Source: Ginglymostoma cirratum (lineage: Eukaryota). From it: a DNA stretch of 50,369 nucleotides. Below the pieces are notes generated by a model that saw only the letters and a list, made by a program, of their open reading frames with translations, made no database searches and was not told the DNA's origin. The stretch is taken from positions 1,009,367 through 1,059,735 of the forward strand of contig JAHRHZ010000166.1 of assembly GCA_024137785.1 (NCBI GenBank), in the 5' to 3' direction. Positions 3,471 through 46,682 of the stretch are shown here, in pieces. Position numbers and translations under genes: made by a program. How positions within the stretch are numbered: position 1 is the stretch's first letter; every line of letters starts with the position of its first letter.

Positions 3471-3919
3471 AGAAAATTATAGCAGAGGATGATTTTATGG
3501 GTGGCACATGAGCTCAATGTTGATTCCTCATTTGGAGGTCTGTGACGTTATTTCCAATTTCTCATCAAAATATCATCTTTAATCCGTTAACCACTTGCGA
3601 TTTTTCCATCATCAACATCAGTGTGATCTTCCTGTATTAGCTAGCAGAATCAAACATTTTGCTCTGGACATGGTGTCAAATGTGGACCAGGCAAGGCAAC
3701 GAAGGCCGTTGTCCTTCTCAAAAGGGGCTTCAATGAACCAGGTGGATTCTTACATCAATATGCATTAATTACACAGTCATTACATTGCAACCTGTGATGA
3801 TGGGATTAGATCTCATGCCCTCAGACAATTAGCCTCGAATCCTGGATCACTAGTTCTGTGATGTTATCACGATATCACTACTATTTCCATATTTAATTAA
3901 ATTTTAATTCAATTCAGGA

Positions 3920-3925
3920 TTTATT
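3920..3925 (-). promoter_or_regulatory. Candidate polyadenylation signal (AATAAA) of the VJ-C1 gene
   Basis: TTTATT on + strand; first AATAAA I found downstream of the predicted stop. The region is AT-rich, so a chance match is possible. Confidence 0.45.
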
Positions 3926-4193
3926 TAAGAATAAAAAAATGAAGAAACATGATACAAAAGATTAAATTTAAATTCATGAATTCTGACTGTGTGTCTATTC
4001 TTCTGGTTTTCTACATTCACATTTCAGACTAACGAGTATCAAGCTACGTCAGCACAAAATAACATTGATGTATATTTGCTTGAGATATCGCTTAATATTG
4101 TCCCTTACTGTTTGCTGAATGAAAAATTAAAACAGCAGTGTGAATGAACTTCCGTATCTTGCTTTGTTCGATGACTCAGCGTTTCATTTCCCA

Positions 4194-4232
4194 TCAGAGT
4201 TCTGCTGTAAATGCAAGGTGAGCATAAAGAGT
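4194..4232 (-). CDS. Exon 6: terminal exon [12 protein letters not shown] with TxYxxL (ITSM/ITIM-like) motif
   Basis: Strong acceptor attttctcccttag|, phase 0 matching exon 5, TGA at 4196-4194, AATAAA about 270 nt downstream. Confidence 0.7.
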   Translation of the reverse strand, partial: TLYAHLAFTAEL

Positions 4233-7200
4233 CTAAGGGAGAAAATATATGATATCAATAACCAATGAAAAATAGGAAATATCACTTAATTTCACCCCTC
4301 GTCTGGATCCGTCGACACATTAATTAATGGGGCCCGTGTTGAAGTTATAATATCAGTGCCTCTGGGCCTGAAAATCTGTTTTCAGGCCCCATATACACCA
4401 GATATGTGTCTGAACTCATTGTTTTAAATAACCAATAAGAAATTCACTAATTCCTCTGAACCAAATCGTTGAGTGACCGTGCTATGGAGCACAGAAATAA
4501 GGCCTTTCTGCCCATCAGTTTTATGCAAGTAAAAAATAAGCACTTCCAATTATTATAGCTCCATTTACCAAACTTTACCTCCAGGACTTATATACCTTTT
4601 AACAACAAGTGCACATCTAAACACTTCTCAGAATTTGCGAGGATTTCTATCTCCTCCACACTTACAGGCAACGGACTTGAGATTATCACCATACTCTAGG
4701 TGGAAAAGGTAAAGTCCTCAACCCTCCTCGAAACCACCTGCCTCTTATCTGAAATCTATGCCGCTCGTCATTTCTTCCTCCATGAAGGGAAGAAAAAAGT
4801 ATATTCCTGTCCACACTGTTTATGTCCCTTGTAACACTACATATTTTAATCATGCCCCTCCTTAAAAAAACTGTTTAAAGGAAAATAACCCCATCCTACC
4901 AAATCTGTCATCATAATCGAAGTGAAAGTTTTACTTCTGAACATGAAATATGAGTAAAATGCTTCAAATTCAATTTCCATCATCCTCAAACAACATATTT
5001 GAAAGGGTTCATATAAAATATCCGTAAACACAATGCTATGGAATTGAAAGCTAAACTTTCATCATTTAATGTAATGCCCAACTACAAATGTCTGTCACTT
5101 TCTCTTTGTAACAGATCAAAGATTATAAACATCCTAATCACAATTAACGCTTCTATTTTCCAGCGTTACACACAGGTACATTATTCAGAGCGATGTCAAT
5201 TTCCTCAAAGTTACTGATGTTGAGAATCCATAAAAATGTTCTCATATCTAGTCAGTTTGGCCAAAAATTTACACAACGTTGCTTTGGGTCATTCATCGTG
5301 GTTTTCTTTTAGACCCCTTATCATCAACAACAATCTGCCTTAAATAAAAACCAAAGGAACTTCGGATGCTGCAAATCAGAAACATGAACACAAGTTGCTG
5401 TAATAGCTCAGCAGATCTGGCAGAAAATGTGAAGAGCAATCAATGTTAGCATTTTGGGTTTGGTGAACCTTTCTCACAAATGGTGGTAGCAGGGAACATT
5501 GCGGTTTACATGCTGCAGGTAGGGTGCGGGGATCAGGTAAGGAGTCAATGATAGGTGGGAATAGAGCCCAAAGAGAGACAAAAGCATGTGGACAGACAAA
5601 GGCATAATAACGATCTGGCTACGAGGGTGAATTGCTGTTAATGGGTAACAATAGGTTCTGTGGAATGACAGAGCATGTGATAACAAGGCGCGGTATTTGG
5701 ACAAGGGAGTCAGAACATTGGAGAGTTCAGGCCCTAAAATTATTGAACTCGATCTTGTTTCTGGAGGGCTGCATTCCCCCAAAAGAAATTGAGATGCTAT
5801 TCTTCCAGCTTGCACCAAGGTTCTCGGGAACACTGTAGCAGGCCTGAGACAGGGATGTTAGAAGGAACAGGGTGGCGTGTTAAAGCAGACGTCAACTGGG
5901 AGGAAGTTCAGGGTCATTTTTGCAGGCAGGATGTAAATGTTTGGTGAAGCGGTCACGCACCCTCCGCTGCGTTTCCCCAATATAGAAGAGAGCACATTGT
6001 GAGCAGTAAATGTGGTAGACTGAGATAAAAGGTACTGCAGATGCTGGAGAATCCGAAGATAACAAAGTGTGGGGCTGGATGAACACAGCAGGCCAAGCAG
6101 CATCATAGGAGCAGGAAAACTTGACGTTTGGGGTCTAGACCCTTCATCAGAAATGGGGGAGGGGAAGAGGGTTCTGAAATAAATAGGGAGATGGGGGAGC
6201 CGGATAGAAGATGGATAGAGGAGAGGATAGGTGGAGGGGAGGCAGACAAGTCAAAGAGGCGGAGAGGGAGCCAGTAAAGGTGAGTGTAGGTGGGGGGTAG
6301 GGAGGAGATAGGTCAGTCCAGAGAGGACGGACGGGTCAAGGGGGCGGGATGATGTTAGTAGATCGGGGATGGGGGTGGGACTTGAGGTGGGAGGAAGGGA
6401 TAGGTGAGAGGAAGGACAGGTTAGGGAGGCGGGGTCAATTGGGCTGGTTTTGGGATGCGGTTGGGGGAGGGGAGATTTTGAAGCTTGTGAAATCCACATT
6501 GATACCATTGGGCTGCAGGGTTCCCAGGCTGAATATGATTTGCTGTTCCTGCAGCCTTCGGGTGGCATCACTGTGGCATTGCAGGAGGCCCAGGATGGAC
6601 ATGTCATCTGAGGAATGGGAGGGGGAGTTGAAATGGTTCGCGACTGGGAGGTGCAGTTGTTTGTTGCGAACTGAGCGCAGGTGTTCTGCAAAGCGGTCCC
6701 CAAGCCTCCGCTTGGTTTCCCCAATGTAGGGGAGGCCACAACGGGTACAGCGGATGCAGTATACCACATTGGCAGATGTGCAGGTGAACATCTGCTTGAT
6801 GTTAAAAGTCTTCTTGGGGCCTGGGATGTGGGTGAGGGAGGAGGTGTAGGGGCAGGTGTAGCACTTCCTGCGGTTGCAGGGAAAAGTACCGGGTGTGGTG
6901 GGACTGGAGGGGAGTGTGGAGCGGACAAGGGAGTCACGGAGAGAGTGGTCCCTCCGGAAAGCAGACAAGGGTGGGGAGGCAAAAATGTCTTTGGTGGTGG
7001 GGTGGGATTGCAGTTGGCGGAAGTGTCGGAGGATCATGCGTTGGATCCGAAGGTTGGTGGGGTGGTCCGTAGACTAGATTGTGTGAAGTGCAGGTGAAGT
7101 TTCTTCACTACCAGCAGTTCTGATGAAGGGTCACCGGACTCGAGATATTAGCTTTTATTTCTCTTCACTGACGCTGCCAAGACCTTCTGAACTTTTCAAG

Positions 7201-10200
7201 AAACTTTTGTTTTTGTTTCTGTCTTAAATTCTTACCCGAAATCTAACAATAATGACAATCTCTCTGCACTCACCTCCTTTTCTTTGTCACGATGTCTCGA
7301 ATCTGAGAAATTATATTTCTTGGCTCTATCAGCTAATACAAAGGGAAACATAAACATTTGCAGTTTCCACAATGAAATTTTGTTGATTATCGTATAAACA
7401 ACCACAGCAAAATAAAATCCAACAGCAATGTGATTAATTTTGACTAAAAACACAGGGACATCACGTCTTACCTGCGTTTTGGTTCCTGCAGCTCCATCTA
7501 ACAACTACAGTGGAAACTGCAAGGAGGAAAATCATCAGAATGGAACTTCCATAAAGCAAGAAAGGGCAAATCTGACCCCCTGGTTCTGAAAAAGTAGAAA
7601 TGTTACCATTAAAATTTTCATCACCCGAGATATCACAGTAATGCAGAAAGTTTAGGGAGAGGCATGAGCATTATTTCGAAACAATGATGGATTAGAACTT
7701 AACGTCTCACTGGAGGATTCCTCCTTAAGGTTCTTAAGACAAATTATGAAATGTTTTCTGCAACAATTGCAGTTGCCGCAAGACTTTAATTATCCAATTG
7801 AATGGTTTAGCAAAACATGATACTATCCACTGGACGTGTTTTAAACTGTCAAGAAATGTCATTAATTTTCCATCATTTAAGTTTACCAATAATCAAAACT
7901 CTCTTTTCAAACTTGGTTTAAAAACATTGAGCTCCAAAGCGTGAATGTCGAAAGTTTGTATGACTATTCAAGAGTTAATTACTTCTCTGTTTGAGAAGTT
8001 CTCAAAGGTCGAAACACCTTTACAATGCAGGTTTAAGGTAATCAGACACAGGCCATAGTTTAAATCAATGGAAGAAACAGTGATTTCAATGTCTGAGTTC
8101 ACAAATTAATAAATACATTTATGTCATTTTAGGTAGGTTGGACTAGCAATCAGTGACTTCCAGTTGGAAAACTTTAGAATTGCATAGAGTAGAAGCTACT
8201 GAGCACATCAGGAATGCACGGCTTAACTTAGAAGTTGGCTACAGGAAGAGAGTTCAGATTAAAATGTTAAATGGATGAAAAAAAGTAAAAGACAGATTTC
8301 AGTTAAGGAAAAACATACTTTATGAGAATACTGCTTCCGAGCGAATAATGTCAGCAGGAAACTGTGTCAAAAACAATGGTGTCAAACATTGCATGAAGGT
8401 CTGGAATACAGACAATGTTTAGAGACAGGGAATTGACAGACTCAGTTAGAAATGTTAGCAAACGTTATGCAAATAGTCCTTAATTAAACGAATCACATTT
8501 CGTCAGCCTTCCTGCACCTATGATGCTTACTGGCCTGCTGTGTTCATCAAGCTCTACACTTTATTATCTCGTATTCTCCAGCATCTGCAGTTCCTATTAT
8601 CTCTGAGGCTTTTGAAAATATTGGATTTTCCTGCCATTAATCAGAATCTGTCATGTTAGGTATCGAATGCATTTCCTATGTTTATGCTGTTAGAAGTACC
8701 TATATCATTTAGTGCTGCTAGCAGTACTCTTGGCTGAAGCTATTGAAATGCCACTGCAAAACGTGAGTACAGCTTATTTATTACCATAGATAGTGCATGA
8801 GGCTGACAAAAGGAGTAGGTCAGCATCAAAGTATTCGAAAGAGCAATGAGCATAGGAAGTGTTGAGAAGAGAAGAGTAGATAAAGAATACTCGGTGTCTG
8901 TAGAATTCACACAGAAGATAGAACATCGAACATAGAACATCACAGCACAGTACAGGCCATTTGGCCCTCGATGTTGCGCCGACCTGTGAAACCAATCTGA
9001 AGTCCATCGAAACTACACTATTCCATTATTATCCATATGTTTATCCAACGACCATTTAAATGCTCTTAAAGTTGGCGAATCTACAACTGCTGCAGGCAAA
9101 GCATTCCATGCCCGTACTACTCTCTGAGTAAAGAATCTTCCTCTGACATCTGTCCTATATCTATCACCCCTCAATTTAAAGCTATGTCCCCTCGTGCTAA
9201 ATGTCACCATCCGAGGAAATAGGTGTATGGCAGGGAGATTTACCAGGATGGTGGCTGGAGTGGAGGGCAGATTTGATGAGGAAACGTCAAGGGAGCTAGG
9301 GCTTTTGTCATTGGAGTGCAGAAGGATGAGAATTGAGTTAATCGAGGTGTACAAGATGATGAGAGGCATAGACAGAGCGGAGAGCCGGAGTTTTTTTTCC
9401 CCCAGGGTGGAAACGAGTATTATGAGGGGGCACAATTTTACTGTGATAGGAGGAAAGTGTAGGGGAGATGTTGGAGATAAGTTCTTTACACAGCGAGTGG
9501 TGGGTGCGTGGACTACGCTGCTGGTGGAGGAGTGGAATTAGATACAAGTGGAGTTAGGAATATTTAAACAACTCTTGGATATGCACATGGATGATGGGAA
9601 AATGTAGGGTTTGCAGGGGAGTTCGATCTTAAAATAGGATAATAGGTCGCACAACATAGTGGGAAAAGGGCCTGTACTGTGCTGTACAATTCTATGTTCT
9701 ATCTATGTTCTTTTGAGCTAAATCAGTGTTGCTTCTATTCACGCAGGGGATGCAGTAAAGGCACACACTAGTGATAACTATGAAATAATGAAATGAAATA
9801 ATTAAAATGCAGTTAGGAAATGGATAGAGGAGGAACAGAAGGATATAACTTGATTGGTTTTGGTGTGCTTCATTACAAATTTAATTGCAGAACAACTATC
9901 AAAATAACTGAGAGAATGTTAAATGAGACCACATAGTGTCTTGAAAAATAAGAAGTATAAAAAGGTGATAATAATTATCACCACATTATATTTGCAATTG
10001 TGCAGATAAAACCATGCTAAAAAAGAAGATACAATTGTTAGTGGATGTTAATTATTACGGTGAAAACAAATGTTTATTCAGGGATGTTAGAAGAAAGAAC
10101 TTTTGAATTTGTGAGAAATCAAGTACCCATCCACCTAACGACTTGCAACTGCATTAGAATGTGGATGGTTGGTAGTTTAACAAAAATGTTAGGAACATCG

Positions 10201-13200
10201 GTATCAGGAGCTGAATTCCGTGGGTGTCCTCAAAATCATTAACGTAGATAAGTCCCCAAGGTCAGATAATATCTATCCCAGGGTGCTGAAGAAGGCAAGA
10301 GAGGAGTTTGCCGAAGCCTTGACAGAGATCTTTGTAGCCCTTTTATCCATAAGCAATGCTAGAGAGGAACTTTGAATAGCTTGGGTTAATCCTTTGCTGA
10401 AGAAGGGACACAAGTATAATCCAGGAAAACATTGTCTGACAAGCCTTATAACATTGGAAGGAGAATTATTAAGGAAGATTGTTAGAGAGAGGGATTGATG
10501 TCAATTGGAGAAAAAAGGGAATTTGTTTGGGAAAGGCAGGATGGTGTTAGGCAGTCGTGCTGACAACACAGTATGGAGCTGGAGCAACACAGCAGGACAG
10601 GCAGCATCATAGGAGCAATAAAGTTGACGTTTAGGGTCGTGACCCTTCTTCAGAAATGGGGAGGTTGGAGGGAGCTTGGAAATAAATAAAGAGGAGGGGT
10701 GGGGCTGGAGAACCTAGGTGTGATGGTGAAAGGTGAGTGCAGGGAGGGAGTGTTGGAGATTGGTATGTGGGATAGGTAGGGCAGATTGGTGGAGTGTCCA
10801 TCTTCTCCCCCACCCAGGGAGATCAGAACACGGGAAAGGGGTATTTGGAAGGGTATGTGCACTCAGCACACGAGTCAAGACTTGGGAGTGTGAGCGACCC
10901 ATATCTGAATCTCCCTCTCTGATTCTCTATTCGCTTCCCGATTCTGTGCTCCTCTACGATTCGCTCTGTGTTTAACTTCTCTCCCACCAACTGCTGATTC
11001 TCTCCCCATCTATTTCTTTCTCCCTCTCTGATTCTCTCTTGTGTTTCCAATTTGGACCCCTCATATCCTGATTCTCTGCCGCTGAACTCCATTTTAAAAG
11101 TGCACTTCAATGCACAATTGGGTTTCTGCTCATGGAAATTTCTCCCTATGACATCGCACGAAAATGCTTCACCTTGACATAGTGTCTGGAACCCGCCGCC
11201 TTTGTGTTTTTGGTTCAGCACGCATCCGTAGCTGTGGGTGTCAACAAACATAGACTTAAATCTTAAAGACTTATGATCATTGTCATAAAAATGTACGGCA
11301 GCAGACATTTGCTACTCGCCTGGCTTCATTCTCTCAAAGATAGTAGGAACTGCAGATGCTGGAGAATCTGAGGTAACAAGGTGGCAAGCTGGATGGACAC
11401 AGCAGGCCAAGCAGCATCATAGGAGCAGGTAAGCTGACGTTTCGGGCCTAGACCCTTCTTCAAAAATTTTCTGAAGGGTTTACGCCTGAAACGTCAGCTT
11501 TCCTGCTGTTATGATGCTGCTTGGCCTGCTGTGTTCATCCAGCTCGCCACCTTGTTATCTCTCTTCTTTCTCTCAAACCAGCTTCTACTTGATCTCCTGT
11601 CTTGTGAGAATTTTTGTGTGCTCGCTGAAAAAAAAATCTCTCTTCAACATATATGAAGAACTTAGCTTGCTTTAAGAATTTCTCCATCCCTGTCAACATC
11701 TCATCATTTCCAATCATTTTAGCTCTATACCTCTGAGATTTTGTCTTAATATCTGTATGTGCATCGCTCCCTCACTTCTTGGATTTCTACACACCCCAAA
11801 CAAGGTGATTGTCACTTTTGCTTTAAGTTTTATGCATACGACCTCTTTTGAGGAAGTTTCCAAGGTATCACCCATCCTTTTTGGAGTTATTTATTCCTTG
11901 ATCAAAATAGCGAGATTACCTTTTCTTGTGTAGATCTCTCTTCACCCCATCTCGCCTGAATTGTCTATAATCTGGCATATTATGCCAATTTGCATATGCC
12001 TCCTTCAAACAAGTTCTGTCATAGAATTAACATCACATTCCCTTGCATTAATGAACAAACTCTATTCATATGATGGACACATGAAACTATTGTATCAAAT
12101 TAATGGCACTGAACATTGCCACGCTCCCTTCATTTTTTTTTAACTCGACTACATCCACACTGCCTTCTAGATTGACTTTGCTCATCTTGCAAGTTTGTTT
12201 TTACATTAGCCATTCCAGTACAGGCAATACATATCCCACTTAATAAAATTAGTTGAAGTCTCAACCAACCACAAGAGCAACCACCTTGCCACCTCACAAG
12301 TATGCGATTGGTTCCATTCAGCACATTTTGCTGTTGTTTCAGATTTCCAGCAAAGAACAGAGAACAATGAAAATTACAGCATACCAACAGATCCTTTGGC
12401 CCTCCAAACCTGCATAGACATGCTGCCCATCACAACTAAAACCCCTACCCTTCCGGGGACCGTACCCCTCTATTCCCATCCTATTCATTTATTTGTCAAA
12501 ACGCCCTTTAAACGTCAGCATTGCATCTATTTCCACTACTTCCCCTGGCAGCGAGTTCCAGGTACCCACCACCCTCGGTACAAACAAAAACTTACCAGGT
12601 ACATCACCTTTAAACCTTGTCCCTCGCACTTTAAACTTTTGGCCCCTGGTAACTGACTCTTGCACCCTGGGAAAAAAGCTTCTGACTGTCCACTCTCTCC
12701 ATGCCCTTCATAATCTTGTAAACCTCTATCAGGTCTCCCCTCAACCTCCGTCATTGCAGTGACAACAACCATTTTTCTCCATATTCTCCTCATAGTTAAT
12801 GCTCTCCCTACCGGGGAACATCCAGACAAATGTTTTCTGTACCCTCTCCAAGGCTACCACATCCTTATGTTGCCTTGTTAATGACGTTCTCCACCTGCAT
12901 TGCCACTTTCAGTTACCTGTGTACCTGTACACCCAAATCCCTCTGCAGATCAGTGCTCTTACGTGTTCTGCCATTTGTGTATATTTTCTGTCTGGATTAG
13001 ATCTTCCAAAGTACATCGCCTCATATTTTTCCAGATTAAACTCCATTTTCCATCTCTCTGCCCAAGTCACCTACCGATCTATATCCAGCTGTAACCTTTG
13101 AAGGTCCTCAACACTATCTGCTACCAACCTTTGTTCCATCAGCAAACTTACTAATCAGACCAGTAACATTTTCCTCCAAATCATTTATATATATTACAAA

Positions 13201-16200
13201 TAGCAAAGGCCCCAACACTGATCCCTGAGGAATGCCACTAGTCACAGCCGTCCATTCAAAAACATACATTTCCACTGCTACCCTCTGTCTTCTATGACCA
13301 AGCCAGTATTTTGTATCCATCTTGAAAGCTCACCTCTGACCCCATGCGACTTTACCTTTTGCATCAACTTGCCATGAGGGACTTTGTCAAAGGTCTTTGC
13401 TGAAGTCCATGTAGACAGCATCTACTGCCCCACCCTCATTGATAATCTTCATACCTTCTCAAAAAATTCAACCAAGTTAGCAAGACATGATCGCCCCCTC
13501 ACAAAACCATGACGCCTCTCGCTAATATGCCCACTTATTTCCAAGTTGGAGCAAATACTTTCTGGAAGAATCTGCACCAATAATTTCACTACCACTGACA
13601 TAAGGCTCACCGGACTGTAATGAGCTGGATTATCCTTGCAACCTTCTGTACCATAACCTATACTCCAATCCTTTGAGACCTCCCCTGCAGCCAGTCAGGA
13701 TACAAAGATTTCCCTCAAGGCCCCTGAAATTGCCACTCTGGCCTCTTTCAGTATTTTGGGATATATTCCATCAGGCCCTGGGAACTTGTCTACATCAATG
13801 TTTTTTTCAAGACGCCCAACACCTCCTCCCTTTTGATCTCAACATGACCCCAACCTATCTACCCACGAATCCCCAAACTTATCATACACAAAGTCCTTCT
13901 CTTTGGTGAATACTGACACAAAGTACTCATTCAATACATCGCCCATTTTTCTGGCTCCACACATAAATTCCCTTCCTTGTCCTTGAGTCTGCCATGCCTC
14001 TTCATGGCTAACCCCTGCTCTTTGTATATGTATATAAAGCCCTGGAGTTTTCCTTAACCTTGTTGGCCAATGACTTTTCATCACCCCTTTTAGTCTTTCT
14101 CACTCCTTACTTAAGTTTATCCTGACTTTCCTTGTGTTCTACCCTGGCTTTGGGAGTTCCCAGCCTCCTAGCCTTGTGAAATGCATCCTTTTTCTTTTTG
14201 ATTAGACTCACAATATCTCTCGTTATCCAAGGTTACCTAAACGTTCCATAATTAACCTTCATCCTTACAGAAATGTGCTGTTCTCGAGTTCCTCGCAAAT
14301 TATTCTTGAAAGCCTCCCACATACTGGATTTTGATTTTCCCTCAAACGTCTGCCACCAATCTACATTCTTCAGTTCCTGTCTAATATTGTTGCAATTAGC
14401 CTTCCCCTAATTTAGCAGTTTCACCTCACAACTGTATCTATCTTTATCCATCAGTACCTTAAAGCTTAGTGAATTGTGATCACTCTTCCCAAGCTGCTCC
14501 CCTACTGAAACGTCGACCATCTGGCCGGGCTCATTCCCCTGTATTAGTTCCAGTACAGCTCCTTTCTTCATAGGGCTACCTACAGAAGGAGCTGTGGGTA
14601 TGGGGTTGTTGGGAAGATCACTGGGAATTACCCACAAACAAATTTCTGGAAGCAGTGACTGCACTGATGCAGATCTTCCCAAGGTCAGCCAACCAGCATC
14701 ACCACTCTGCTGCCCTCTTCCAGGTGGGTTGTCAGTTCTTTGTTAATTTTCGTCGAGTTAGTATATTCAAATTATCCCGGATGAGTGGTTAGCTTAATTG
14801 CCTAGACCGCTGAATTTCCATATTGGCTGAGGTAACCATGAATGTCCCATCTTTTCAAATTTCCATCGACTAAGTTATGATGACTGCCATGTTTACTGAC
14901 CACCAGTAATCTCTCTCTCTATTAAGAGAAAAGCTCTATTTTCCTCTAGGGCTGTGGTAACTTTACAATACCTAGTATTCTTAGTGCTGCATTAGATGGA
15001 TGTAAAATATAAGCCACCCTAGCATTTTACACACATTTGAAAGTCATAATAGAATAGTTAAGATTGAATTTAACATCACACTTGAGATTTTATGTGCAGG
15101 AAACAAAACTCATGGCGCCTACATGGATAGTAGAAGACATTGTATTAACAGGTGACGTGTTCTGATATGGGAAAAGCCAATCCTGTTCTTTGTTCATATT
15201 GTACCCTGACTATTGTGTGGAGGATATAGTCTCCTTCATTGGGAAATGATATACTTGCCATAAAGACATGGAGTGATACTGGAGTGAGTAGTAATCTCAC
15301 ACATGGAGAGATTATTCAGACTGAACCTGTATTGACTAAGTTGAGAAGAATGACAGTGCTCTGAATGAAACATAAAGAAGTCTAAGACCCCTAGGCAGAC
15401 TTGATGAAGTAAGGGTGCTTCTCTCGTTCGTTTAAATCTACAACAGGACTCAAAGTCCATGATTAGGGTATAGGATATTTACGGCTGAGATGAGGAAACA
15501 TTTCTTCTTTAAGTTGGCCAACATGTTCAGTTCTCTACCATAGATGACTGTGAGAGCTGGATCAGTATAATGTTTCATAAAGAGGTTTTCTTTTAAATAT
15601 TCAAAGCATCAAGTTGTACAGAGAGAATGTGGGAAAATAATGAAGAGACAAATGAATATCCCTCGATAATCTGAGTTGTAGAACAGAATCACGGGAGCCA
15701 GAAACATTAGGATCTTAAACTGGATATCAGGCCAGTACCGACAAATGATCGAGTGTTAAGTGAAAAGATAACACCATCACATTGGCTATCCATGGGCCTA
15801 AAGAAAAAGCTAATTGCCTGATCGTTACAGTGAGTAAAATTGACAAGTCTAAAGAGAAAAGAAAAAGATGATCAGACTTCAATTACACTACCTGAACTGT
15901 ATTTGTCCTACATGATTTTTACCATCTTATGGGACAATGTCAACAATAATCTATAAATAATTGGCATGATTGAAACATTCCAGAAATCCTGTAGAACCAG
16001 GTGGATCTGTAGACAGGGAAGTGAAAGGCAGTGATAAGGAATGGGGACAATAAAAGATGTCAGAATTAAGATAGAAATTGGGTAATTAGATATCCATGTG
16101 ACAAACGATTACATAAAGATACTGTCTTTTATTGCATTCCTCAGATATTATTTTTGGTTAAGAGTAGTGTGCACTGTCACTGCATTTCCTTGATTAAATG

Positions 16201-19200
16201 ATCAAAACCTGCACTTGAGGCTCCTTTGTTAGATTATTCGAAACAACCTCAACAAGTGCGATGATCACGTCGGGTTTTTATGTTAATAATGAATAAAGAT
16301 GCACTCGTGAATGTGGAAAATATTTTACTTGATGACAATGGGTATGAAATGTTTTGCATATAAAAACAATTGTTAGACTGGGATTTTTATTTTCTTTCCA
16401 GGATTGAAAACTTTTTTGTGATTTTGGCAGAATCCTATAGATTATATTTTTTTCTATGCCTTTGTAGGATGTGGGCAATGCTGGCTTGCCAGCATTTCTT
16501 TCCCAAACCTAGTTGCCCTTGAGAAGGTGGTGGTGAACTGCCTTCTTGAACTGCTGCAGCCTACCTGTTATAGACTGACCTACAATGCCATTAGAGGGTT
16601 TTCCAGGATTGTGATCCAGCAACAGTGTAGGACCAGTGATATATTTCCAAGTAAGGATTTTGAGTGGCTTGGAGGGGAACTTGAAGATGGTAGTGTTCCC
16701 CTATGTTTTGTGCCCTGTGCTGCTCGATGGAAGTGACCCTGAGGTTGGAATGTGTTATCTGACGATGTTTGGTAAATTTATGCAGTGTATATTGTAGATA
16801 GTGCACACTACTGTTACTGAGCTTTGGATGGTAGAATGAGTGGATACTTGTGGATGTAATGCCAACCCAGCGGGATGTTTTGTTCTGGAAGCTGTCAACC
16901 TTCTTGCGTGTTGCTGGGGCTGCACTCATCCAGGCAAGTGAGGAGTATTCCATCACAGTCCTGATTTGTGCCTCGTAGATAGCGGACAGGCTTTGAGGAA
17001 TAAGGAGGTGAGTTACTCGCCACAGTATTTCTAGCTTCTGACCTTGTCTTGTAGTCCCTGTGGTGAGTCCAGCTGAGTTTCTGGGCAATGATAACCCCCC
17101 CCCCCAGGATGTTGATAGTGGGGAATTCAGTGACGGTAAAACCATTGAATATCAAGGGTGGTGGTTAGATTGTTTCTAATTGGTGATGGTCATACACTGG
17201 CATCTTTGTGATGTGGGTGTCACTTGCCACTTGTCAGCCAAAGGCTGCATATTGTCCACATCTTGTTGCATTTGAACACAGACATCTTCAGTATCCGAGG
17301 AGTCACGAATGGTGCTGAACATTGTGCAATCATCAGTGAACATCCTCACTTCTGACCTTATGATAGAGAGAAGTTCATTGATGAAGCAGCGGAAGATGGT
17401 TGGGCCGAGGGCACTGCACTGGGGAACTCCTACCTAGATGTCCTGGAGATGAGATGATTGATCTCCAACAACCACAACTATCTTTCCATTGTGTCAGTTA
17501 TTACTCCAATACTATTTTGCCCACTGATGCCCATTGTTTCCAGTTTGGCTAGGGTTCCTTGATGCCACACTCAAGTCGATCGCAGCCTTGATGCCAAGGG
17601 CTGTCACTCTCACCTCACCTGTGGAATTTAGTTCTTTTGCCCATGTTTGAACCAAGGCTGTAATAAGGTCAGGAGCTGAGTAGCCCTGTTGGAACCCAAA
17701 CTGGGCGTCACTGAGCAGGTTATTGCTGAGCACGTCCAGGTTGATAGTACTGTTGATGACATCTTCCATCACTTTACTGTTGATTGAGACTAGACTGGTG
17801 GGGCAGCAATTAGCTGGACTGGATTTGCCCTGCTTTTTGTGTACAAGACATACTTGAGAAATTTTCCACATTGCCGGGTAGATACCAGTGTTGTAACTGT
17901 ATTGGTACAGCTTGGCTAGGGGAGGGGCAAGTTCTGGAGCACAATTAGTCAATACTATTGCCAGAATGTTGCCAGGACCAGTAGCGTGAATTGAATAGGA
18001 ACTAATGAAGAAAGGCCTTTCCACATCTGAATCAGCCCAAACCCAGACCTTCAATGCATTTACGTCAGTTTCAAAGGGGACCATTAGGGATCTTCGCAGA
18101 AAATGCCTTTACGCAGATGTTGCTTAACAAGCCCAAGTGTCTAGAACGAACATTAATTACGATAACGAGCACTGATGCACCAACAAGTAATGCAAACGGA
18201 TAAAAAGGAAAGTAGTTGAAAAGTACTTGTTGATCGTGGAGATAATGACAACATATTTTTTGGAAATACAACAGAACAGAAACACCAGAATTTACCTCTT
18301 CATTGAAATCCTTTGTTTCAGATTTATAGATACATTGTAATATTCAAAGCTACATAGGTGAAGGGTGAACAAATGTTGTGAGCATAAATTCTAATTTAAT
18401 ATTTGAAAGTACAAACGTGCCTCCAACTGTGCACGTATTTCCTAGATAGATAAATGGATAATCCTATTCAGAAATAAAGATAAATGCTACAACAAGGCGA
18501 GAAAGTAAAGGAGGTGGTAGTTGATCAGAAACATTGAAAGAAAACGATTTATGGGAAATAAGCAGCTGATACAAACACTGAGTGTCCCATCGGAATTAAA
18601 TATAAAATATACTAACAATATGAATTGTTACCTGTCCGGTATGAATAGTTTTCACTGATAAGATTTGTTGTTGAGTTGATTTGAATTGAGCAAGTGCAAA
18701 CAAACCAGTTGCTATGCTTGTTTCCTTCGACTCCGATTTGACTGCTGACACTGTATACACCGTCACGGATTATTGTTTCTGTATCAGTCCATTCCTCCTT
18801 AGCCCGTGACGAACAATTCCAGCGAATGGTAAGGTAATTAGTGGCTGCACTGCTCACGAAGCACATCAATGGGATATTTTGCAGTGAAAGAATTTCATCT
18901 GATGGTGAGTGTAAGAGTGTTATTGTCGGGGAACCTGCAGAGTAGGTAAGACGTATTTAAAATCTAACATAACTTTGTGGGTATTTATTGTGAACTGATA
19001 AGCAACGACATTCATTCTTACCGGCAACGAATAATTCAGATCCTTTTCCGAATTTGAAGGATGATCCACTAAATTTCTTAGCAGCGCAGTAGTACATGCC
19101 TGAGTCATTTCTTTGCGTATCATCAATAACAAGAGTATAAATAGTCCCTTCTTCGTTAACCTCTCCTGAAAATTTTCCGTTTGGATGCATATGTTTTATA

Positions 19201-19821
19201 ACGGTGAAAACGAGTTGTATGTGTTTTTGCTGCTGGTGTTTATGCCAGAGAACAGCTCCAGCTGCGAGCCATCCCGTGTGGCAATGCATCTTGCATTTAC
19301 TTCCAATTGAGGCAGTTTGAACTGTTGGAGTCTGCGGGTACACTGCCTGAGAGACAACAACTGAAGAACAGCATGAATTACATTAATTTCTTGCGTAGTA
19401 GGAAATTAAGAAAAAATATAGATCAAAACCTTCCAGACAATGAAAACTGTCTCCTGTGTAGTTCATCTTTTATTCTTGGAAAAGTGGTGGTCCCCTGTTC
19501 ACACTTCAAGATCCCACACATAAAATGAAGACAAAAGAATCAGCTAATCTGTTGTACTGAAAGATGTTTTTGTCTTTGGGCGGAGTAGTGAATTCCCCTG
19601 CTCGATTAACGTGCCTGTTATATTAGAACATTGGCCTTTTGTAATAGACCAATAACAACTCAAATTCTTAAAGCAACATTAATATTAAAGACTGCCAGTT
19701 TGAACTTGCCTCATGAATCATCTTTTAAGTGATTTTACACTCATAATTAAGCCATAAATTTATGAAAGATAACCTTACCTGGCAACAAATGAAAAAGCGC
19801 CAGCAGAGTCAAGAGGATCAT
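4194..19821 (-). CDS. Spliced gene, join(19821-19779,19360-19022,18934-18632,7585-7472,7302-7274,4232-4194): non-rearranging VJ-C1 Ig-superfamily type I membrane receptor, 288 aa (PRARP/VJC1-like architecture)
   Basis: Exon lengths 43+339+303+114+29+39=867 nt. All introns are GT-AG, with phases 1,1,1,1,0, and there is no internal stop. Protein: [26 protein letters not shown]...[14 protein letters not shown]...[36 protein letters not shown]...LMCFVSS...IRWN...YSVSSQI...FVCTC...[64 protein letters not shown]. The family name is inferred from domain order; additional small exons in the long introns cannot be excluded. Confidence 0.8.
4480..4900 (-). mobile_element. Old CR1 3' end
   Basis: Degenerate similarity to the CR1 3' ends at 8919 and 12360. 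Confidence 0.5.
5345..7225 (-). mobile_element. Older Penelope-like element (GIY-YIG remnant) with inverted terminus, interrupted by a younger PLE
   Basis: [18 protein letters not shown] in ORF 5892..6086. The body resumes at 7076 after the nested insert; 7111-7225 is an inverted copy of the 5345-5475 terminus. Confidence 0.75.
6022..7068 (-). mobile_element. Young 5'-truncated Penelope-like element, open GIY-YIG endonuclease frame (6435..7037)
   Basis: [10 protein letters not shown] Cys linker and [29 protein letters not shown]...[17 protein letters not shown]. Flanked by 7-bp direct repeat GTAGACT (6015-6021, 7069-7075). Confidence 0.92.
7274..7302 (-). CDS. Exon 5: short cytoplasmic exon ([10 protein letters not shown])
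   Basis: Acceptor aatttctcag|, donor GAG|GTGAGT, phase 1 to 0, 169 nt downstream of the TM exon. Confidence 0.7.
7472..7585 (-). CDS. Exon 4: connecting peptide plus transmembrane helix
   Basis: Strong acceptor ttctactttttcag|, donor G|GTAAGA, phase 1 to 1. Encodes [38 protein letters not shown]: about 21 uncharged residues followed by a basic stop-transfer. Confidence 0.85.
8500..8606 (+). mobile_element. Solo PLE terminal fragment
   Basis: CGTCAGCCTTCCTGCACC...CCAGCATCTGCAGTTCCTATTATCTC matches the terminus of the other PLE copies. Confidence 0.75.
8919..9222 (-). mobile_element. CR1 3' end
   Basis: [34 protein letters not shown] and GTTCTAT-type tail repeats. Confidence 0.85.
9223..9710 (+). 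mobile_element. CR1 3' end (opposite orientation)
   Basis: [26 protein letters not shown]...[11 protein letters not shown]; TTCTATG tail repeats. Confidence 0.85.
9800..10560 (+). mobile_element. Old CR1 ORF2 fragment
   Basis: Degenerate DKSP...IYPRVLK...PLLKKG...NPG region at 10240-10500. Confidence 0.55.
10565..10790 (-). mobile_element. PLE terminal fragment
   Basis: Homologous to the PLE terminus at 6060-6300; hammerhead core degenerate (GAAA>TAAA). Confidence 0.7.
11338..11563. mobile_element. Fold-back (head-to-head) pair of PLE termini
   Basis: About 90-bp inverted arms (11369-11458 vs 11473-11561) meeting at the hammerhead core. Confidence 0.85.
12360..14585 (-). mobile_element. 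CR1 LINE, 5'-truncated ORF2, frameshifted
   Basis: GNEPGQ...SDHNSL; [20 protein letters not shown]...SKFADGTK; 3' end near 12360. Confidence 0.9.
15270..15710 (+). mobile_element. Old CR1 3' end
   Basis: Degenerate TTTACGGCTGAGATGAGGAAACATTTCTTC (F..EMRK.FF) region. Confidence 0.5.
16450..17990 (-). mobile_element. CR1/L2-group LINE (second family), RT and 3' end
   Basis: [12 protein letters not shown]...[18 protein letters not shown]...[19 protein letters not shown]; [20 protein letters not shown]. Confidence 0.85.
18632..18934 (-). CDS. Exon 3: C1-set Ig constant domain
   Basis: Follows an 87-nt intron; acceptor ctctgcag|, donor G|GTAACA. Motifs [31 protein letters not shown]; sequons NCS, NST, NYS (ORF 18612..18869). 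Confidence 0.92.
19022..19360 (-). CDS. Exon 2: V-set Ig domain with fused J segment
   Basis: Acceptor ttcttcag|, donor G|GTAAGA. Contains B-strand Cys (MHC), C-strand Trp (VLWH), YTLVI, DSGMYYC and the J motif FGKGSELFV in one exon (ORF 18957..19343). Confidence 0.95.
19779..19821 (-). CDS. Exon 1: signal peptide ([14 protein letters not shown])
   Basis: acaATG start, 14 hydrophobic codons plus 1 nt, then donor G|GTAAGG. Typical short phase-1 Ig/TCR-type leader exon. Confidence 0.85.
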
Positions 19822-19899
19822 TGTCTGCGATGAACTTATTACTTCAAATTTCACACTGAGGTTTTGTTTTTCCGCTTTATTGTTTGCACGATCCAGAAC

Positions 19900-20010
19900 A
19901 GAACATTTATGTAAGATAGCGTTTAAGAAATTGCTACGTTGTCAGGAAAAGAAGACATGTGGAAAATGTAACGTGATGGAAATGATATTTGTGGGTTTCC
20001 TGTTTACACA
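19900..20010 (-). promoter_or_regulatory. Candidate proximal promoter of the VJ-C1 gene
   Basis: TATA-like CATAAAT about 85 nt upstream of the ATG. Clustered TGTGGG (RUNX-like, 19990), TTCCTG (ETS, 19997) and TGTTTAC (forkhead, 20001). Motif matches only. Confidence 0.3.
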
Positions 20011-21271
20011 TTAACTGCGTGCAAAGAAATGACCATCGAAAGGGCATTTGGTTAAAATTTGGTTTGATAATGCAGTAAAAGGAAATGTGCCGTCCCCGAT
20101 TAAAAAAAGGATGTTACAAATTAATAACATATCAATGGTGTTGTTATTTTGAGTGCTGATCTTTATATTAGCCTTCATCTTAACCAAAAACTTTAAAAGA
20201 ATACAAACTACACGAGTTCAATTGAAACTGATTTATATGTTCATGCACTGTTCCAGCAATATGTGAATTTCTCACACCCGTTTGGTTTTTGAAAGAGCTC
20301 TTTTTCTTTTTCTGTGTTAGCTCTCGCTGAGGAGGCCACCATGAACCTTACTGTACATCATATCATAACGTAATGGCCCAAAGTAGGGATATGAATTCCA
20401 TCTTCAAGATGTTTTCAGTGCCTGCACTGGAGTAATACTGCACTACTGGAGTCGTACTCCTATATCTGAGAGACTAAGATGAGATGCCAGCACGTCCTAT
20501 CAGAAAAGAGATAGCGTATCTGTCCAGTTAAGTTCACTAGCCACCCTCTCGCGCATAGATCCACAAGTAGACAAGGGCAGAGACAGTGCATGCAGGAAAG
20601 TAATCTCTCCACCCCAAATTATCCTAAGAAAACAGCAGTAATTTTTTAAATAAAAAAAATTAAGGTAAGTTATCCGATCTATTTCAAGATACTCACTTGG
20701 AATGGCTGCATAACTGACGTCCTCCACTGTGTGCAGTGGTCACCCCATGAAGGAACCTCTGCCAGCTTCAAAATTGAGCAAAATTCTCTACAGATTTCAG
20801 TGCAGATCAAATTCCAGGCACAATGTATAAACAAATCAAAGAGGAAACTTTTTTTCTGTATTAAGTCAGAATTGTATTGAAAGTTTCCCGACGTGGATTC
20901 AACTGATATCAAATCAAATTGATCCGAACAGTAAGTACACCAAATGCAGTTCCTGGGCTACCTCGACGGGAAATTGGAACAGTTGCATTGACGAAATTTC
21001 ATGCTCATCTGAATCCCCACTCAAACTAAAAAAAAAACCAGAATTGTGACAACAAACTTTCAGAGTTAGTGATATAAATAACAAGTTGTGAATGCACTGA
21101 ACTGAATTGCATACTTATACAGAAATCCTTAATATAAAGATTATAAGTAGAATTGATCCCTTTTCCCATTAATGGTCCTTCTGCCATTTACTTCAATCAT
21201 GGTTGGTAGATTGTCCACAATTACACCTTCCTATTTTTATTTTCCACATAACCAATGATTAAAAATCTGAA

Positions 21272-44009: not shown

Positions 44010-44946
44010 AGCCTACTAACTCCCACAGCTACCCAGAATACATCTCCTCCCACCCACGCTTCAGACTCCCAACCAGCCCCGCCACCCCGGCACATTTCCC
44101 TGCAACCGGAGGAAATGCAATACCTTCCCCCTCACCCCCATCCCAGCCCCCAAGAAGACATTCCACATCAAACAGATGTTCACCTGCACATCTGCTAATG
44201 TGGTATACTGTATCCACTGTTTCCGATATGGCCTCCTCTACATCAAGGAAACCAAGCGGATGCTTGGGGACCGCTTTGTGGGACACTTATGCTCGGTTCG
44301 CAACAAACAACTACACCTCTCAGTCGCGAACCATTTCAACTCCTCCTGCCACTCCTCAGGTGACATGTCCATCCTAGGCCTCCTGCAGTACCACAATGAT
44401 GCCACCCAAAGATTGCAGGAACAGCACCTCATATTTTGATTGGGAAACCTGCAGCCCAATTGTATCAATGTGGTCTTCACAAGCTTCAAGACCTCCCCTC
44501 CCCCAACCACATCCCAAAACCTGCCCAGCATGTCCCTGCCTCCCTAACCTGTCATTCCTCCCACCTATACCCTCCTCCCACCCCAAGCCCCATCCCCATC
44601 TCGTACCTACCAGCATAATACCACCTCTTTGATCTGTCCACCCTAACTCGACTGACCTATACGCCACCCTAACTCCACACCTGCACTCACCTTTACTGGC
44701 TGCACCCCCACTTCTTTGACCTTTCTGTCTCCTCTCCACCTATCTTCTCCTCTATCCATCTTCTATTCACCTCCCCACTCCCTATTTATTTCAGAACCCC
44801 CTTGTAATACCCCATTTCTGAAGAAGGGTCTAGGCCCGAAACATCAGCTTTCCTGCTCCTCTGATACTGCTTGGCCTGCTGTTTTCATATAGCTTTACAC
44901 CTTGTTATCTCAGATTCTCCAGCATTTGCAGTTCCTACTATCTCTA
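44010..44946 (+). mobile_element. PLE GIY-YIG + terminus, decayed
   Basis: VVYCIHCFRYGLLYIKETKRMLGDRF; terminus with hammerhead motif at 44814-44850. Confidence 0.88.
44814..44850 (+). ncRNA. Hammerhead motif variant (CUGAAGA...GAAACAUC)
   Basis: ATTT-CTGAAGA-AGGGTCTAGGCCC-GAAACATC. Confidence 0.55.
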
Positions 44947-46668: not shown

Positions 46669-46682
46669 AATAAGTTTGTACA

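What the first reader, a model, noticed from the sequence alone, without database searches (positions are those of the whole stretch)
4194..19821. Hidden, intact non-rearranging antigen-receptor-like gene (L-VJ-C1-TM-cytoplasmic tail)
Seen: six phase-compatible GT-AG exons splice to an uninterrupted 288-aa protein across 15.6 kb of TE-filled introns. V and J (YYC-11 aa-FGKG) sit in one exon, joined through an 87-nt intron to a C1-set domain. No RSS, D or separate J segments are near. Established: V(J)+C1 is the Ig/TCR chain layout, C1 domains are largely confined to jawed-vertebrate immune proteins, and germline VJ-C1 genes (PRARP/VJC1-type, shark UrIg) are discussed as resembling the receptor that predated RAG insertion. 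Inference: this is such a receptor in a cartilaginous fish, possibly an uncharacterised family member. Automated pipelines may mislabel it as an Ig light chain or TCR.
Basis: partly seen in the sequence, partly recalled or inferred. Interest (0 to 1): 0.9.

Follow-up and report, generated by a model that had tools for sequence, protein, structure and literature searches.

The report
Shark non-rearranging VJ-C1 inhibitory receptor
This is a real, intact and transcribed shark gene for a membrane receptor built like a single pre-joined antibody or T-cell-receptor chain with an inhibitory-type tail. It belongs to an old multigene family that annotation pipelines mislabel and that bears on how antigen receptors began.

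Summary
Observation confirmed, with one correction. A minus-strand gene of six GT-AG exons spans 19821-4194. It has a split leader, a single-exon VJ (V-set 45 bits, YYC...FGKG), an 87-nt intron, a C1-type exon, a Cys-plus-uncharged-TM exon and two tail exons.

Homology to a 300-aa Chiloscyllium plagiosum protein (61-91% identity per exon, collinear) puts exon 5 at 7332-7274 (59 nt). The product is therefore 298 aa, not 288.

A cDNA-like public contig joins exons 2-3 and carries the first 30 nt of the TM exon directly after exon 3. A second contig joins exons 1-2. One polyA RNA-seq read also crosses the 87-nt intron.

The C domain folds as C1. There is no RSS beyond chance.

The gene is not an IgL, TCR, UrIg/UrIg2 or three-domain SIRP. 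It belongs to a clustered VJ-C1-TM-[ST]xYAxL family found in sharks, rays, chimaera, coelacanth, lungfish, a frog, reptiles and birds. This is probably the PRARP lineage, but I could not verify that. Pipelines name the members Ig kappa-, lambda- or gamma-like, TCR-like or lachesin-like.

The likely function, a disulfide-linked dimeric inhibitory receptor, is inferred. This scan has already found many members of the family elsewhere in the same genome. The gene is a new member of a known kind, of moderate interest.

The parts
19779..19821 (-). Exon 1: start codon and first part of the split leader ([14 protein letters not shown], phase 1). The 5'UTR runs upstream to at least 19973.
   Evidence: Sequence read directly. 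It is 86% identical to the P0053 leader. A contig in run X2 joins 19779 to 19360, and another contig covers 19779-19973.
19022..19360 (-). Exon 2: end of the leader plus a germline-joined VJ domain (…[28 protein letters not shown]).
   Evidence: Pfam V-set 45.2 bits, E 1.2e-11. The best PDB matches are Ig V-kappa and TCR V-alpha, E 4e-13. It is 76% identical to P0053. Both flanking introns are spliced out in X2 contigs.
18935..19021 (-). 87-nt intron between VJ and C1 (GTAAGA…CTGCAG).
   Evidence: The intron is skipped in an X2 contig of depth 26, and its range is also left uncovered by the single laid read of polyA RNA run X5.
18632..18934 (-). Exon 3: C1-type constant domain with the family's C-x-C motif (FVCTCSIQ).
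   Evidence: Pfam C1-set is the only hit, at 17.7 bits, below the cutoff of 21. The AF2 model has pLDDT 76 and strands A to G. The top Foldseek hits are IgG CH3, IgNAR C, TCR C-beta and MHC-II beta2. It is 78% identical to P0053.
7472..7585 (-). Exon 4: short connecting peptide with a membrane-proximal Cys (EPGGQIC), an uncharged TM ([22 protein letters not shown]) and a stop-transfer stretch RWSCRNQNA.
   Evidence: The loose end of the X2 contig at 18632 equals 7556-7585 and occurs once in the window, so the exon 3-exon 4 splice is shown.
7274..7332 (-). Exon 5 (59 nt): cytoplasmic (A)[19 protein letters not shown].
   Evidence: It is 74% identical to P0053 residues 268-286. The acceptor has a polypyrimidine tract and the donor is GTGAGT. 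No RNA was examined here.
4194..4232 (-). Exon 6: [12 protein letters not shown] and the stop codon. It holds the family's conserved [ST]xYAxL tyrosine motif (ITIM/ITSM type).
   Evidence: Ten of 11 residues (91%) are identical to the tails of P0001, P0053 and P0054. The motif is conserved across alignment A2.
3913..4193 (-). Probable 3'UTR, with AATAAA at 3925-3920.
   Evidence: 493 nt of the X2 contig lie beyond exon 3. That equals 114+59+39+281 nt and would end about 12 nt past the AATAAA.
7586..18631 (-). 11,046-nt intron 3, carrying TE remains.
   Evidence: RVT_1 fragment at 13114-13320, E 1e-5. No Ig-type exon of this family lies inside it.

Best explanation
Window 19821-4194 (minus strand) is an intact, transcribed, non-rearranging gene. 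It encodes a type I membrane protein of about 298 aa made of these parts:
- a signal peptide;
- one V domain with a built-in J strand;
- one C1-type domain;
- a short stalk with a conserved cysteine;
- an uncharged transmembrane helix;
- a 45-residue tail ending in ETLYAHLAF.

It is the ortholog, or the closest paralogue, of Chiloscyllium plagiosum 'lachesin-like isoform X1'.

It belongs to a clustered multigene family of VJ-C1-TM-[ST]xYAxL receptors. The family occurs in all elasmobranchs examined, with kin in chimaera, coelacanth, lungfish, a frog, reptiles and birds. From memory of Fu et al. 2019, this is the PRARP lineage, but that was not verified here.

Inferred mechanism:
- Two chains pair through the A-B-E-D faces of their C1 domains and are locked by the stalk cysteine, as homodimers or with a paralogue.
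- The paired or single V domain binds a germline-encoded ligand.
- Phosphorylation of the tail tyrosine recruits SH2 phosphatases and damps the cell.

Shown: the gene structure, its intactness, its splicing and transcription, its domain types and its family membership. Inferred: dimerisation, ligand binding and inhibitory signalling.
For: Structure and intactness:
- The exons have canonical GT..AG sites, compatible phases and no stop or frameshift.
- All six exons are collinear with P0053. Identities are L 86%, V 76%, C 78%, TM 61%, exon 5 74% and exon 6 91%.
- The window keeps 16 of the 18 residues that are invariant in alignment A2, read by mapping the window exons residue by residue onto P0053.

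Transcription:
- Run X2 covers exons only.
- A 1138-nt contig of depth 26 spans exon 2 and exon 3 without the 87-nt intron. It runs on into letters that match 7556-7585 uniquely.
- A second contig joins exon 1 to exon 2.
- PolyA RNA run X5 gives one read, and its coverage is split across the 87-nt intron. Its first mate lies on the + strand, as expected for a minus-strand RNA.

Domain types:
- V-set scores 45 bits.
- The C1 topology is supported by C1-only Foldseek hits.
- Pfam C1-set is hit in 26 of 29 family members.

Family:
- In separate V and C trees the window is sister to P0053, with SH-aLRT 99 and 100.

Dimer:
- Two copies of the C exon scored ipSAE 0.47, against 0.02 for the best of 3 controls.
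- The runs agree in at least 94% of contacts and the partner's pLDDT is at least 70.
- The mark was reached by 21 of 30 proteins solved as pairs of one chain and by 0 of 23 solved as single chains (microbes).
- On eukaryotes it was reached by 17 of 29 (animals 7 of 16) and by 0 of 30 single chains.
- The interface lies on strands A, B, D and E.
- The stalk Cys and the tail Y-A-x-L are nearly invariant in the family.
Against: - No function was tested. Tissue and cell type of expression are unknown, and run X2 is of unrecorded kind.
- The window's allele departs from the family at two invariant V positions. WYK is WHK here, although run X2 carries Y. GRFSG is GKFSG.
- It also has an extra Cys in the C strand (NCS), and its C exon falls below Pfam's C1-set cutoff.
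- This sublineage sits on a long stem in the C tree (0.55).
- The homodimer pass may reflect the model's memory of solved Ig C1 dimers.
- T at position -2 with L at +3 is neither a textbook ITIM nor a textbook ITSM.
- The PRARP identity rests on my recollection of a paper I could not open.
- No tree was built with shark IgL, TCR, UrIg or SIRP sequences.
Confidence: 0.75

Rival explanations
1. It is a proper member of the SIRP family. Earlier follow-ups of this scan labelled the family 'SIRP-like'. On this view it is an inhibitory myeloid-type receptor with V and C1 domains that works as SIRP-alpha does.
For: - It has a V domain with a J-like strand, a C1 domain, an uncharged TM and an inhibitory-type tyrosine tail.
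- SIRP-gamma domain 2 matches the C model at Z 11.0.
- One turtle relative is named 'tyrosine-protein phosphatase non-receptor type substrate 1-like' by NCBI.
Against: - It has one C1 domain, not two, and one tail tyrosine motif, not four.
- The SIRP match is tied with Ig, TCR, MHC-II, B7/BTN and UrIg2 C domains, all at Z 10.2-11.7.
- No SIRP appears among the top 60 PDB sequence matches of the V exon, the C exon or the family profile.
- No SIRP-named protein is among the looked-up clusters of the 40 exhaustive C-exon hits.
Confidence: 0.1
2. It is an expressed but functionally decaying copy. On this view it is a transcribed pseudogene in the making, inside a cluster that is known to hold dead copies.
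For: - There are two changes at family-invariant V positions and an extra cysteine, read by mapping the window exons onto P0053 in alignment A2.
- The C exon is sub-threshold for C1-set.
- Both coding differences between the window and run X2 are non-synonymous.
- An earlier scan note reports a pseudogene 29 kb beyond the window.
Against: - There is no stop, frameshift or broken splice site in 897 nt.
- The spliced RNA has depth 26.
- The divergent features, including the sub-threshold C1, are shared with the intact ortholog P0053, so they are lineage traits.
- The Y/H site is polymorphic, and R to K is a conservative change.
Confidence: 0.1
3. It is a germline-joined Ig light-chain gene, a TCR chain gene, or a direct derivative of one.
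For: - The best solved sequence matches of V are Ig V-kappa and TCR V-alpha.
- The family profile aligns across V and C with light chains and Fab heavy chains.
- Sharks do have germline-joined IgL genes (established knowledge).
Against: - The C exon is spliced to a TM exon. Light chains have none.
- The TM has no basic residue, unlike TCR chains.
- The tail bears an inhibitory-type motif.
- Family members score 120-160 bits on the C HMM, against 13-51 bits for the Ig C domains available.
- In the C tree the Ig C rows form a separate branch of moderate support (SH-aLRT 85), apart from one long-branch row.
- There is no RSS.
- The same architecture persists from sharks to reptiles.
Confidence: 0.03
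4. It is a third paralogue of UrIg/UrIg2, the non-rearranging shark antibody-like genes.
For: It has the split leader, a single-exon VJ and C1-type domains, as UrIg and UrIg2 do. The UrIg2 C1 domain (9dmx_B) matches the model at Z 10.7.
Against: - UrIg has 3 C1 domains and is secreted. UrIg2 has 9-11 C domains. This gene has one.
- The structural match is a tie with every other C1 family.
- A possible batoid UrIg2-like protein (P0017/P0081) scores only 23-42 bits per domain on the family C HMM.
Confidence: 0.04

Closest known systems
[quoted passage not shown] 2019, J Immunol 202:1992, cited in PMC10751288; the paper is not held)
   Same: It is non-rearranging and has a single-exon VJ with a J motif, a V-C1 layout, a TM and a tail with an inhibitory-type tyrosine. 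Homologs that I found in turtles, crocodilians, lizards, a frog and birds share the C-x-C motif and the YAx[LV] tail. Bird C domains are degenerate, at 16-23 bits. As I recall, the paper reported the same for birds.
   Different: As I recall, PRARP was described from chicken and other bony vertebrates, not from cartilaginous fish. Here the family is a large tandem expansion. Direct comparison with the published chicken sequences was not possible.
Chiloscyllium plagiosum 'lachesin-like isoform X1' (P0053, 300 aa) and other pipeline-named elasmobranch proteins
   Same: P0053 has the same six-exon layout and is 61-91% identical per exon. It is sister to the window in both the V and C trees.
   Different: It comes from a different species. 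No protein closer than this is in the 15-billion-protein collection; the next hit to P0053 is 52% identical. The names given by pipelines (lachesin, Ig kappa, lambda or gamma, Mem5, TCR) are misleading.
UrIg / UrIg2 (PMC12227049)
   Same: They are non-rearranging shark genes with a split leader, a single-exon VJ and C1 domains, and are proposed relics of the pre-RAG receptor.
   Different: They have 3 or 9-11 C domains, are secreted (UrIg) or very long (UrIg2), are expressed in liver and gill, and have no inhibitory tail reported. The paper does not mention this family.
SIRP-alpha and related paired receptors
   Same: They have a V domain with a J-like strand, C1 domains, an uncharged TM and an ITIM-type tail.
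   Different: They have three Ig domains, four tail tyrosines and no stalk cysteine dimer. No specific sequence or fold preference for SIRP was seen here.
TCR and Ig light chains
   Same: They share the V(J)-C1 chain layout, the phase-1 exon junctions, the FGxG bulge, the predicted C1 pairing face (A, B, D, E) and a membrane-proximal cysteine.
   Different: This gene has no rearrangement signals, no basic TM residues and an inhibitory tail, and its binding site is encoded in the germline.

Membership tests
Elasmobranch VJ-C1-TM-[ST]xYAxL family (unnamed; pipeline-annotated) | Leader, VJ with GRFSG…DSGxYYC…FGNGS, C1 with C-x-C, stalk Cys, uncharged TM, C-R-N-R-Q stop-transfer and an ETxYAxLAF tail, in collinear exons | tested here: met
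   Alignment A2 and per-exon BLAST. 16 of 18 invariant residues are kept. The variants are GKFSG, WHK and FGKGS. In the trees the window sits inside a starred shark clade.
PRARP | Non-rearranging single-exon VJ with a canonical J-like motif | tested here: met
   YYC, then 11 residues, then FGKGSELFV, lie in one exon. RSS-like patterns are at chance level.
PRARP | V-C1-TM layout with an ITIM-type cytoplasmic tyrosine | tested here: met
   The motif here is TLYAHL (TxYxxL), a near-ITIM/ITSM.
PRARP | Orthology or clade membership with the published chicken PRARP genes | tested here: inconclusive
   The paper and its sequences are not held. Sauropsid and bird homologs with the same layout and YAx[LV] tail were found, but none is named PRARP.
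C1-set immunoglobulin domain (second domain) | Seven strands A-B-E-D / C-F-G without C'/C'', closest to Ig, TCR and MHC constant domains | tested here: met
   The AF2 model has strands A to G. The top 50 Foldseek hits are all C1 domains. VIA Z is 10-11.7, mostly C1 domains. Pfam C1-set scores 17.7 bits for this copy, below the cutoff of 21, but 26 of 29 relatives hit it.
UrIg / UrIg2 | VJ followed by three (UrIg) or nine to eleven (UrIg2) C1 domains | tested here: not met
   There is only one C exon, and none is hidden in the 11-kb intron or elsewhere in the window.
UrIg / UrIg2 | Linkage to the MHC (UrIg) or to the IgH/TCR-alpha-delta complex (UrIg2) | not testable with these tools
SIRP | V plus two C1 domains, and a tail with four tyrosines in ITIMs | tested here: not met
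   There is one C1 domain and one conserved tail motif.
Ig light chain | A V-J-C chain without a membrane anchor | tested here: not met
   Exon 3 is spliced to a TM exon in RNA.
TCR chain | Basic residue(s) in the TM for CD3 assembly, and RSS-flanked segments | tested here: not met
   The [24 protein letters not shown], has no charge. There is no RSS.

The most novel reading that the evidence does not exclude
The family to which this gene belongs, rather than UrIg2 alone, may preserve the architecture of the receptor that the RAG transposon split. That architecture would be a membrane-bound, cysteine-linked dimer of VJ-C1 chains pairing through the same C1 face as Ig and TCR, but signalling through an inhibitory tyrosine. 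Within it, the fast-evolving window/P0053 sublineage may be a polymorphic, ligand-driven receptor. It has a long C stem, has lost the interface Gln of WYKQ, and shows two coding differences between individuals, both non-synonymous.
Probability: 0.15. Interest if true: 0.8.

Novelty: new member of a known kind. Interest (0 to 1): 0.45.

Why it matters
Non-rearranging genes with a single-exon VJ joined to a C1 domain are the material for reconstructing how Ig and TCR arose. Recent work puts forward UrIg and UrIg2 as the candidates (PMC12227049) and does not mention this family.

This gene shows that sharks also keep, and transcribe, short membrane-bound VJ-C1 chains. These chains have a TCR-like stalk cysteine, a predicted Ig-like C1 pairing face and an inhibitory tail. 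They occur as a clustered family with kin in lobe-finned fishes and sauropsids.

There are two practical points:
- Public annotation scatters the family under at least eight unrelated names.
- This copy's protein is absent from the large protein collection searched.

For the scan, this gene is one more intact, expressed member of a family already met many times in this genome. It is not a new kind of thing.

Tried and rejected
The 29-nt version (7302-7274) is in frame, but homology and the acceptor context favour 7332.
- **Further family exons.** A search of the whole window found none.
- **RSS patterns.** One weak 12-spacer hit at 49462 is no more than chance, and there was no 23-spacer hit.
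- **Rfam.** Nothing found.
- **Run X6.** No reads laid, so it is no test.
- **Fold comparison to pick a parent family.** VIA-align ties Ig, TCR, MHC-II, SIRP, B7/BTN, UrIg2 and even SYG-2 D4 at Z 10.2-11.7, so it shows only a C1-type fold.
- **Family profile against PDB.** The top 60 hits were multi-domain antibodies, which does not discriminate.
- **Papers.** The PRARP paper and the 2023 UrIg paper are not held. Full-text searches found no held paper describing this shark family.
- **Synteny.** No ortholog DNA, synteny or dN/dS could be obtained.
- **Reference sequences.** Shark IgL, TCR, UrIg, SIRP and chicken PRARP sequences could not be brought in by reference. The trees therefore carry only the Ig C domains that the searches happened to return.
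- **Masked stretch.** The N run at 34573-34710 was left alone.

Full report
**What is there**

The finding lies on the minus strand. I read six exons with canonical splice sites directly from the sequence.

| Exon | Coordinates | Length | Content |
|---|---|---|---|
| 1 | 19821-19779 | 43 nt | [14 protein letters not shown], phase 1 |
| 2 | 19360-19022 | 339 nt | end of leader plus VJ |
| 3 | 18934-18632 | 303 nt | constant-type Ig domain |
| 4 | 7585-7472 | 114 nt | stalk, TM, stop-transfer |
| 5 | 7332-7274 | 59 nt | cytoplasmic |
| 6 | 4232-4194 | 39 nt | [12 protein letters not shown] and stop |

- The introns are 418, 87, 11046, 139 and 3041 nt, and all are GT..AG.
- The coding sequence totals 897 nt, or 298 aa.
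- The V exon ends …[31 protein letters not shown]3 and a J-type G strand are therefore fused in the germline.

- A 288-aa product needs a 29-nt exon 5. That fits 7302-7274, behind an internal AG.
- tblastn of family tails places the exon start at 7332. The window reads [20 protein letters not shown] where P0053 reads [20 protein letters not shown].
- The 7332 acceptor also has a good polypyrimidine tract.
- Both versions are in frame, and I had no read-laying run left to decide between them.

**Is it more than chance?**

- The V exon scores 45.2 bits on Pfam V-set. Its best matches among solved structures are Ig V-kappa and TCR V-alpha, at E 4e-13.
- The C exon hits only C1-set in Pfam, at 17.7 bits, below the cutoff of 21.
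- I folded the C exon with a 52-row family alignment. The model has pLDDT 76 and strands A to G, with the short helix after strand A.
- All top Foldseek hits are C1 domains: IgG CH3, IgNAR C1 and C2, TCR C-beta, MHC-II beta2 and IgM C-mu4.
- 26 of 29 relatives hit C1-set, the best at E 5e-11.
- RSS-like heptamer-nonamer patterns with 12 or 23 spacers occur at chance level, and none is near the gene.
- No other V, C or TM exon of this kind lies in the window, including inside the 11-kb intron.
- The introns carry TE remains: a GIY-YIG ORF and an RVT_1 fragment.

**Transcription**

I laid four public runs of the same species label on 18450-20050.

- Run X2 is of unrecorded kind. It covers the three exons, the 5'UTR and, at lower depth, the unspliced first intron, but has zero depth in the 87-nt intron and below exon 3. 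I read it as cDNA.
- A 1138-nt contig of depth 26 covers exon 3, skips the 87-nt intron and covers exon 2.
- The first 30 letters of that contig's overhang at 18632 are GCAAGAAAGGGCAAATCTGACCCCCTGGTT. They occur once in the window, at 7556-7585, which is the start of exon 4.
- 493 letters of the contig lie beyond exon 3. My model predicts exactly this length if the RNA ends about 12 nt after the AATAAA at 3925.
- Another contig joins 19779 to 19360.
- An unspliced intron-1 contig is also present, at depth 8.
- The bona fide polyA RNA run X5 gave one read. Its coverage is split across the 87-nt intron, and its first mate lies on the + strand.
- X2 differs from the window at two coding sites, and both changes are non-synonymous: V residue 39 H to Y, which restores the canonical WYK, and C residue 67 G to R.

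**What family**

- An exhaustive phmmer of the C exon against 1.84 billion cluster representatives found only 40 proteins at E<1e-3.
- The best hits are 226-412-aa elasmobranch proteins. They come from Scyliorhinus, Heterodontus, Cetorhinus, Leucoraja, Mustelus, Mobula, Pristiophorus, Pristis and Chiloscyllium.
- Searching with one of them added Rhincodon, Hemiscyllium, Stegostoma and Hypanus.
- NCBI names them Ig kappa- or lambda-light-chain-like, Ig gamma-1-heavy-chain-like, Ig heavy chain Mem5-like, lachesin-like, TCR alpha MC.7.G5-like or uncharacterized.
- The alignment shows a fixed design:
  - a leader;
  - a V domain with GRFSG, DSGxYYC and FGNGS;
  - a C1 domain with a C-x-C motif;
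  - a stalk Cys;
  - an uncharged TM;
  - a C-R-N-R-Q stop-transfer stretch;
  - a tail ending in ETxYAxLAF.
- The window keeps 16 of the 18 invariant residues.
- P0053 (C. plagiosum 'lachesin-like isoform X1', 300 aa) is collinear with all six exons. Identities are L 86%, V 76%, C 78%, TM 61%, exon 5 74% and exon 6 91%.
- P0053 is sister to the window in separate V and C trees, with SH-aLRT 99 and 100. Cetorhinus P0051 is next in both trees, so V and C evolved together.
- Nothing in the protein collection is closer to P0053 than 52% identity. This gene's own product is therefore not in the collection.
- Several paralogues of each species sit on one scaffold, judged by shared contig lengths. 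Earlier notes of this scan report further copies 27.6 kb before this window and 29 kb beyond it.

**Wider kin**

Scores on a C-domain HMM of the elasmobranch family:

| Group | Bits |
|---|---|
| Elasmobranch family | 120-160 |
| Neighbouring elasmobranch subfamily that lacks FGxG but keeps C-x-C and an [ILV]YASL tail | 74-100 |
| Coelacanth | 88 |
| Lungfish | 90 |
| Callorhinchus | 70 |
| Turtles | 47-67 |
| Lizards | 24-45 |
| Crocodilians | 19-32 |
| Birds | 16-23 |
| Ig C domains returned by the searches | 13-51 |

- Turtle proteins have FGTGTRLIVT, C-x-C, a TM and a tail with TEYAAV or TEYATL.
- In the C tree the family's rows (60, plus one long-branch Ig domain that falls among them) are set apart from the other Ig C rows with moderate support (SH-aLRT 85). 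A sauropsid clade and a chondrichthyan-plus-sarcopterygian-fish clade lie within it.
- This distribution, and the degenerate bird C domain, match what I recall of PRARP (Fu et al. 2019). That paper is cited in PMC10751288 for VJ genes but is not held. I therefore treat PRARP membership as likely, not shown.
- The gene is not UrIg or UrIg2, which have 3 or 9-11 C domains.
- It is not a SIRP proper, which has three Ig domains and four tail tyrosines.
- Structure cannot choose among the C1-bearing families. SIRP-gamma d2, UrIg2 C1, TCR, Ig, MHC-II and B7/BTN all tie at Z 10.2-11.7.

**How it probably works (inferred)**

- The TM is uncharged and the tail carries one conserved tyrosine motif of ITIM/ITSM type. 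This points to inhibitory or modulatory signalling, not to assembly with CD3-, DAP12- or FcR-gamma-type adaptors.
- The nearly invariant stalk cysteine suggests covalent dimers.
- Two copies of the C exon were predicted to pair with ipSAE 0.47, against 0.02 for the best of 3 controls. The runs agree in at least 94% of contacts and the partner's pLDDT is at least 70.
- That mark was reached by 21 of 30 proteins solved as pairs of one chain and by 0 of 23 solved as single chains among microbes. On eukaryotes it was reached by 17 of 29 (animals 7 of 16) and by 0 of 30 single chains.
- The interface lies on strands A, B, D and E, the face used by CH3-CH3, CL-CH1 and TCR C-alpha/C-beta. Because such dimers are solved, the pass may be from memory. 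It shows likeness, not binding.
- The partner could equally be a paralogue.

**Limits**

- Reference IgL, TCR, UrIg, SIRP and PRARP sequences could not be brought in.
- Only one read-laying run was available.

**Verdict**

- The interpretation overstates how singular the gene is. It is one member of a large family that pipelines already predict and that this scan has met repeatedly in this genome.

Noticed in passing
window 6435-7037 (-): A 200-aa ORF with a GIY-YIG endonuclease domain (24 bits, above the cutoff) lies inside intron 5 of the receptor gene. It is probably a Penelope-like element remnant.
   Followed up: partly
window 13114-13320 (-): A reverse-transcriptase fragment (RVT_1, E 1e-5, below the gathering score) lies in the 11-kb intron 3. 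Neighbouring short ORFs carry FADD/FTDD-type RT motifs.
   Followed up: partly
window 26928-27564 and 28607-29243: A 637-nt inverted repeat, 90% complementary, has arms 1 kb apart. Related arms occur at 44124-46669 and 50139-50369. Strong GC-skew blocks of opposite sign lie on either side (about 20-28 kb positive, 28-34 kb negative). It looks like head-to-head copies of one repeat family.
   Followed up: no
window 34573-34710: A run of 138 N (assembly gap or masked stretch).
   Followed up: no
window 19244 and 18734: Run X2 differs from the window by two non-synonymous changes. V residue 39 goes from H to Y, restoring the family-invariant WYK. C residue 67 goes from G to R. No synonymous difference was seen in the 642 nt of exons 2 and 3 that the contig covers.
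   Followed up: partly
proteins P0011, P0022, P0028, P0030, P0037, P0038 (other elasmobranchs): A second subfamily has a V domain without FGxG, but the same C-x-C C1 domain and an [ILV]YASL tail. Its NCBI accession numbers are adjacent to those of first-subfamily genes (for example XP_067878814/…816, XP_072346563/…564, XP_072139900/…901). This hints at neighbouring gene pairs that might encode heterodimer partners.
   Followed up: no
window 19361-19778: Run X2 also holds an unspliced intron-1 contig at depth 8, beside the spliced form at depth 32. This indicates intron retention or pre-mRNA.
   Followed up: no
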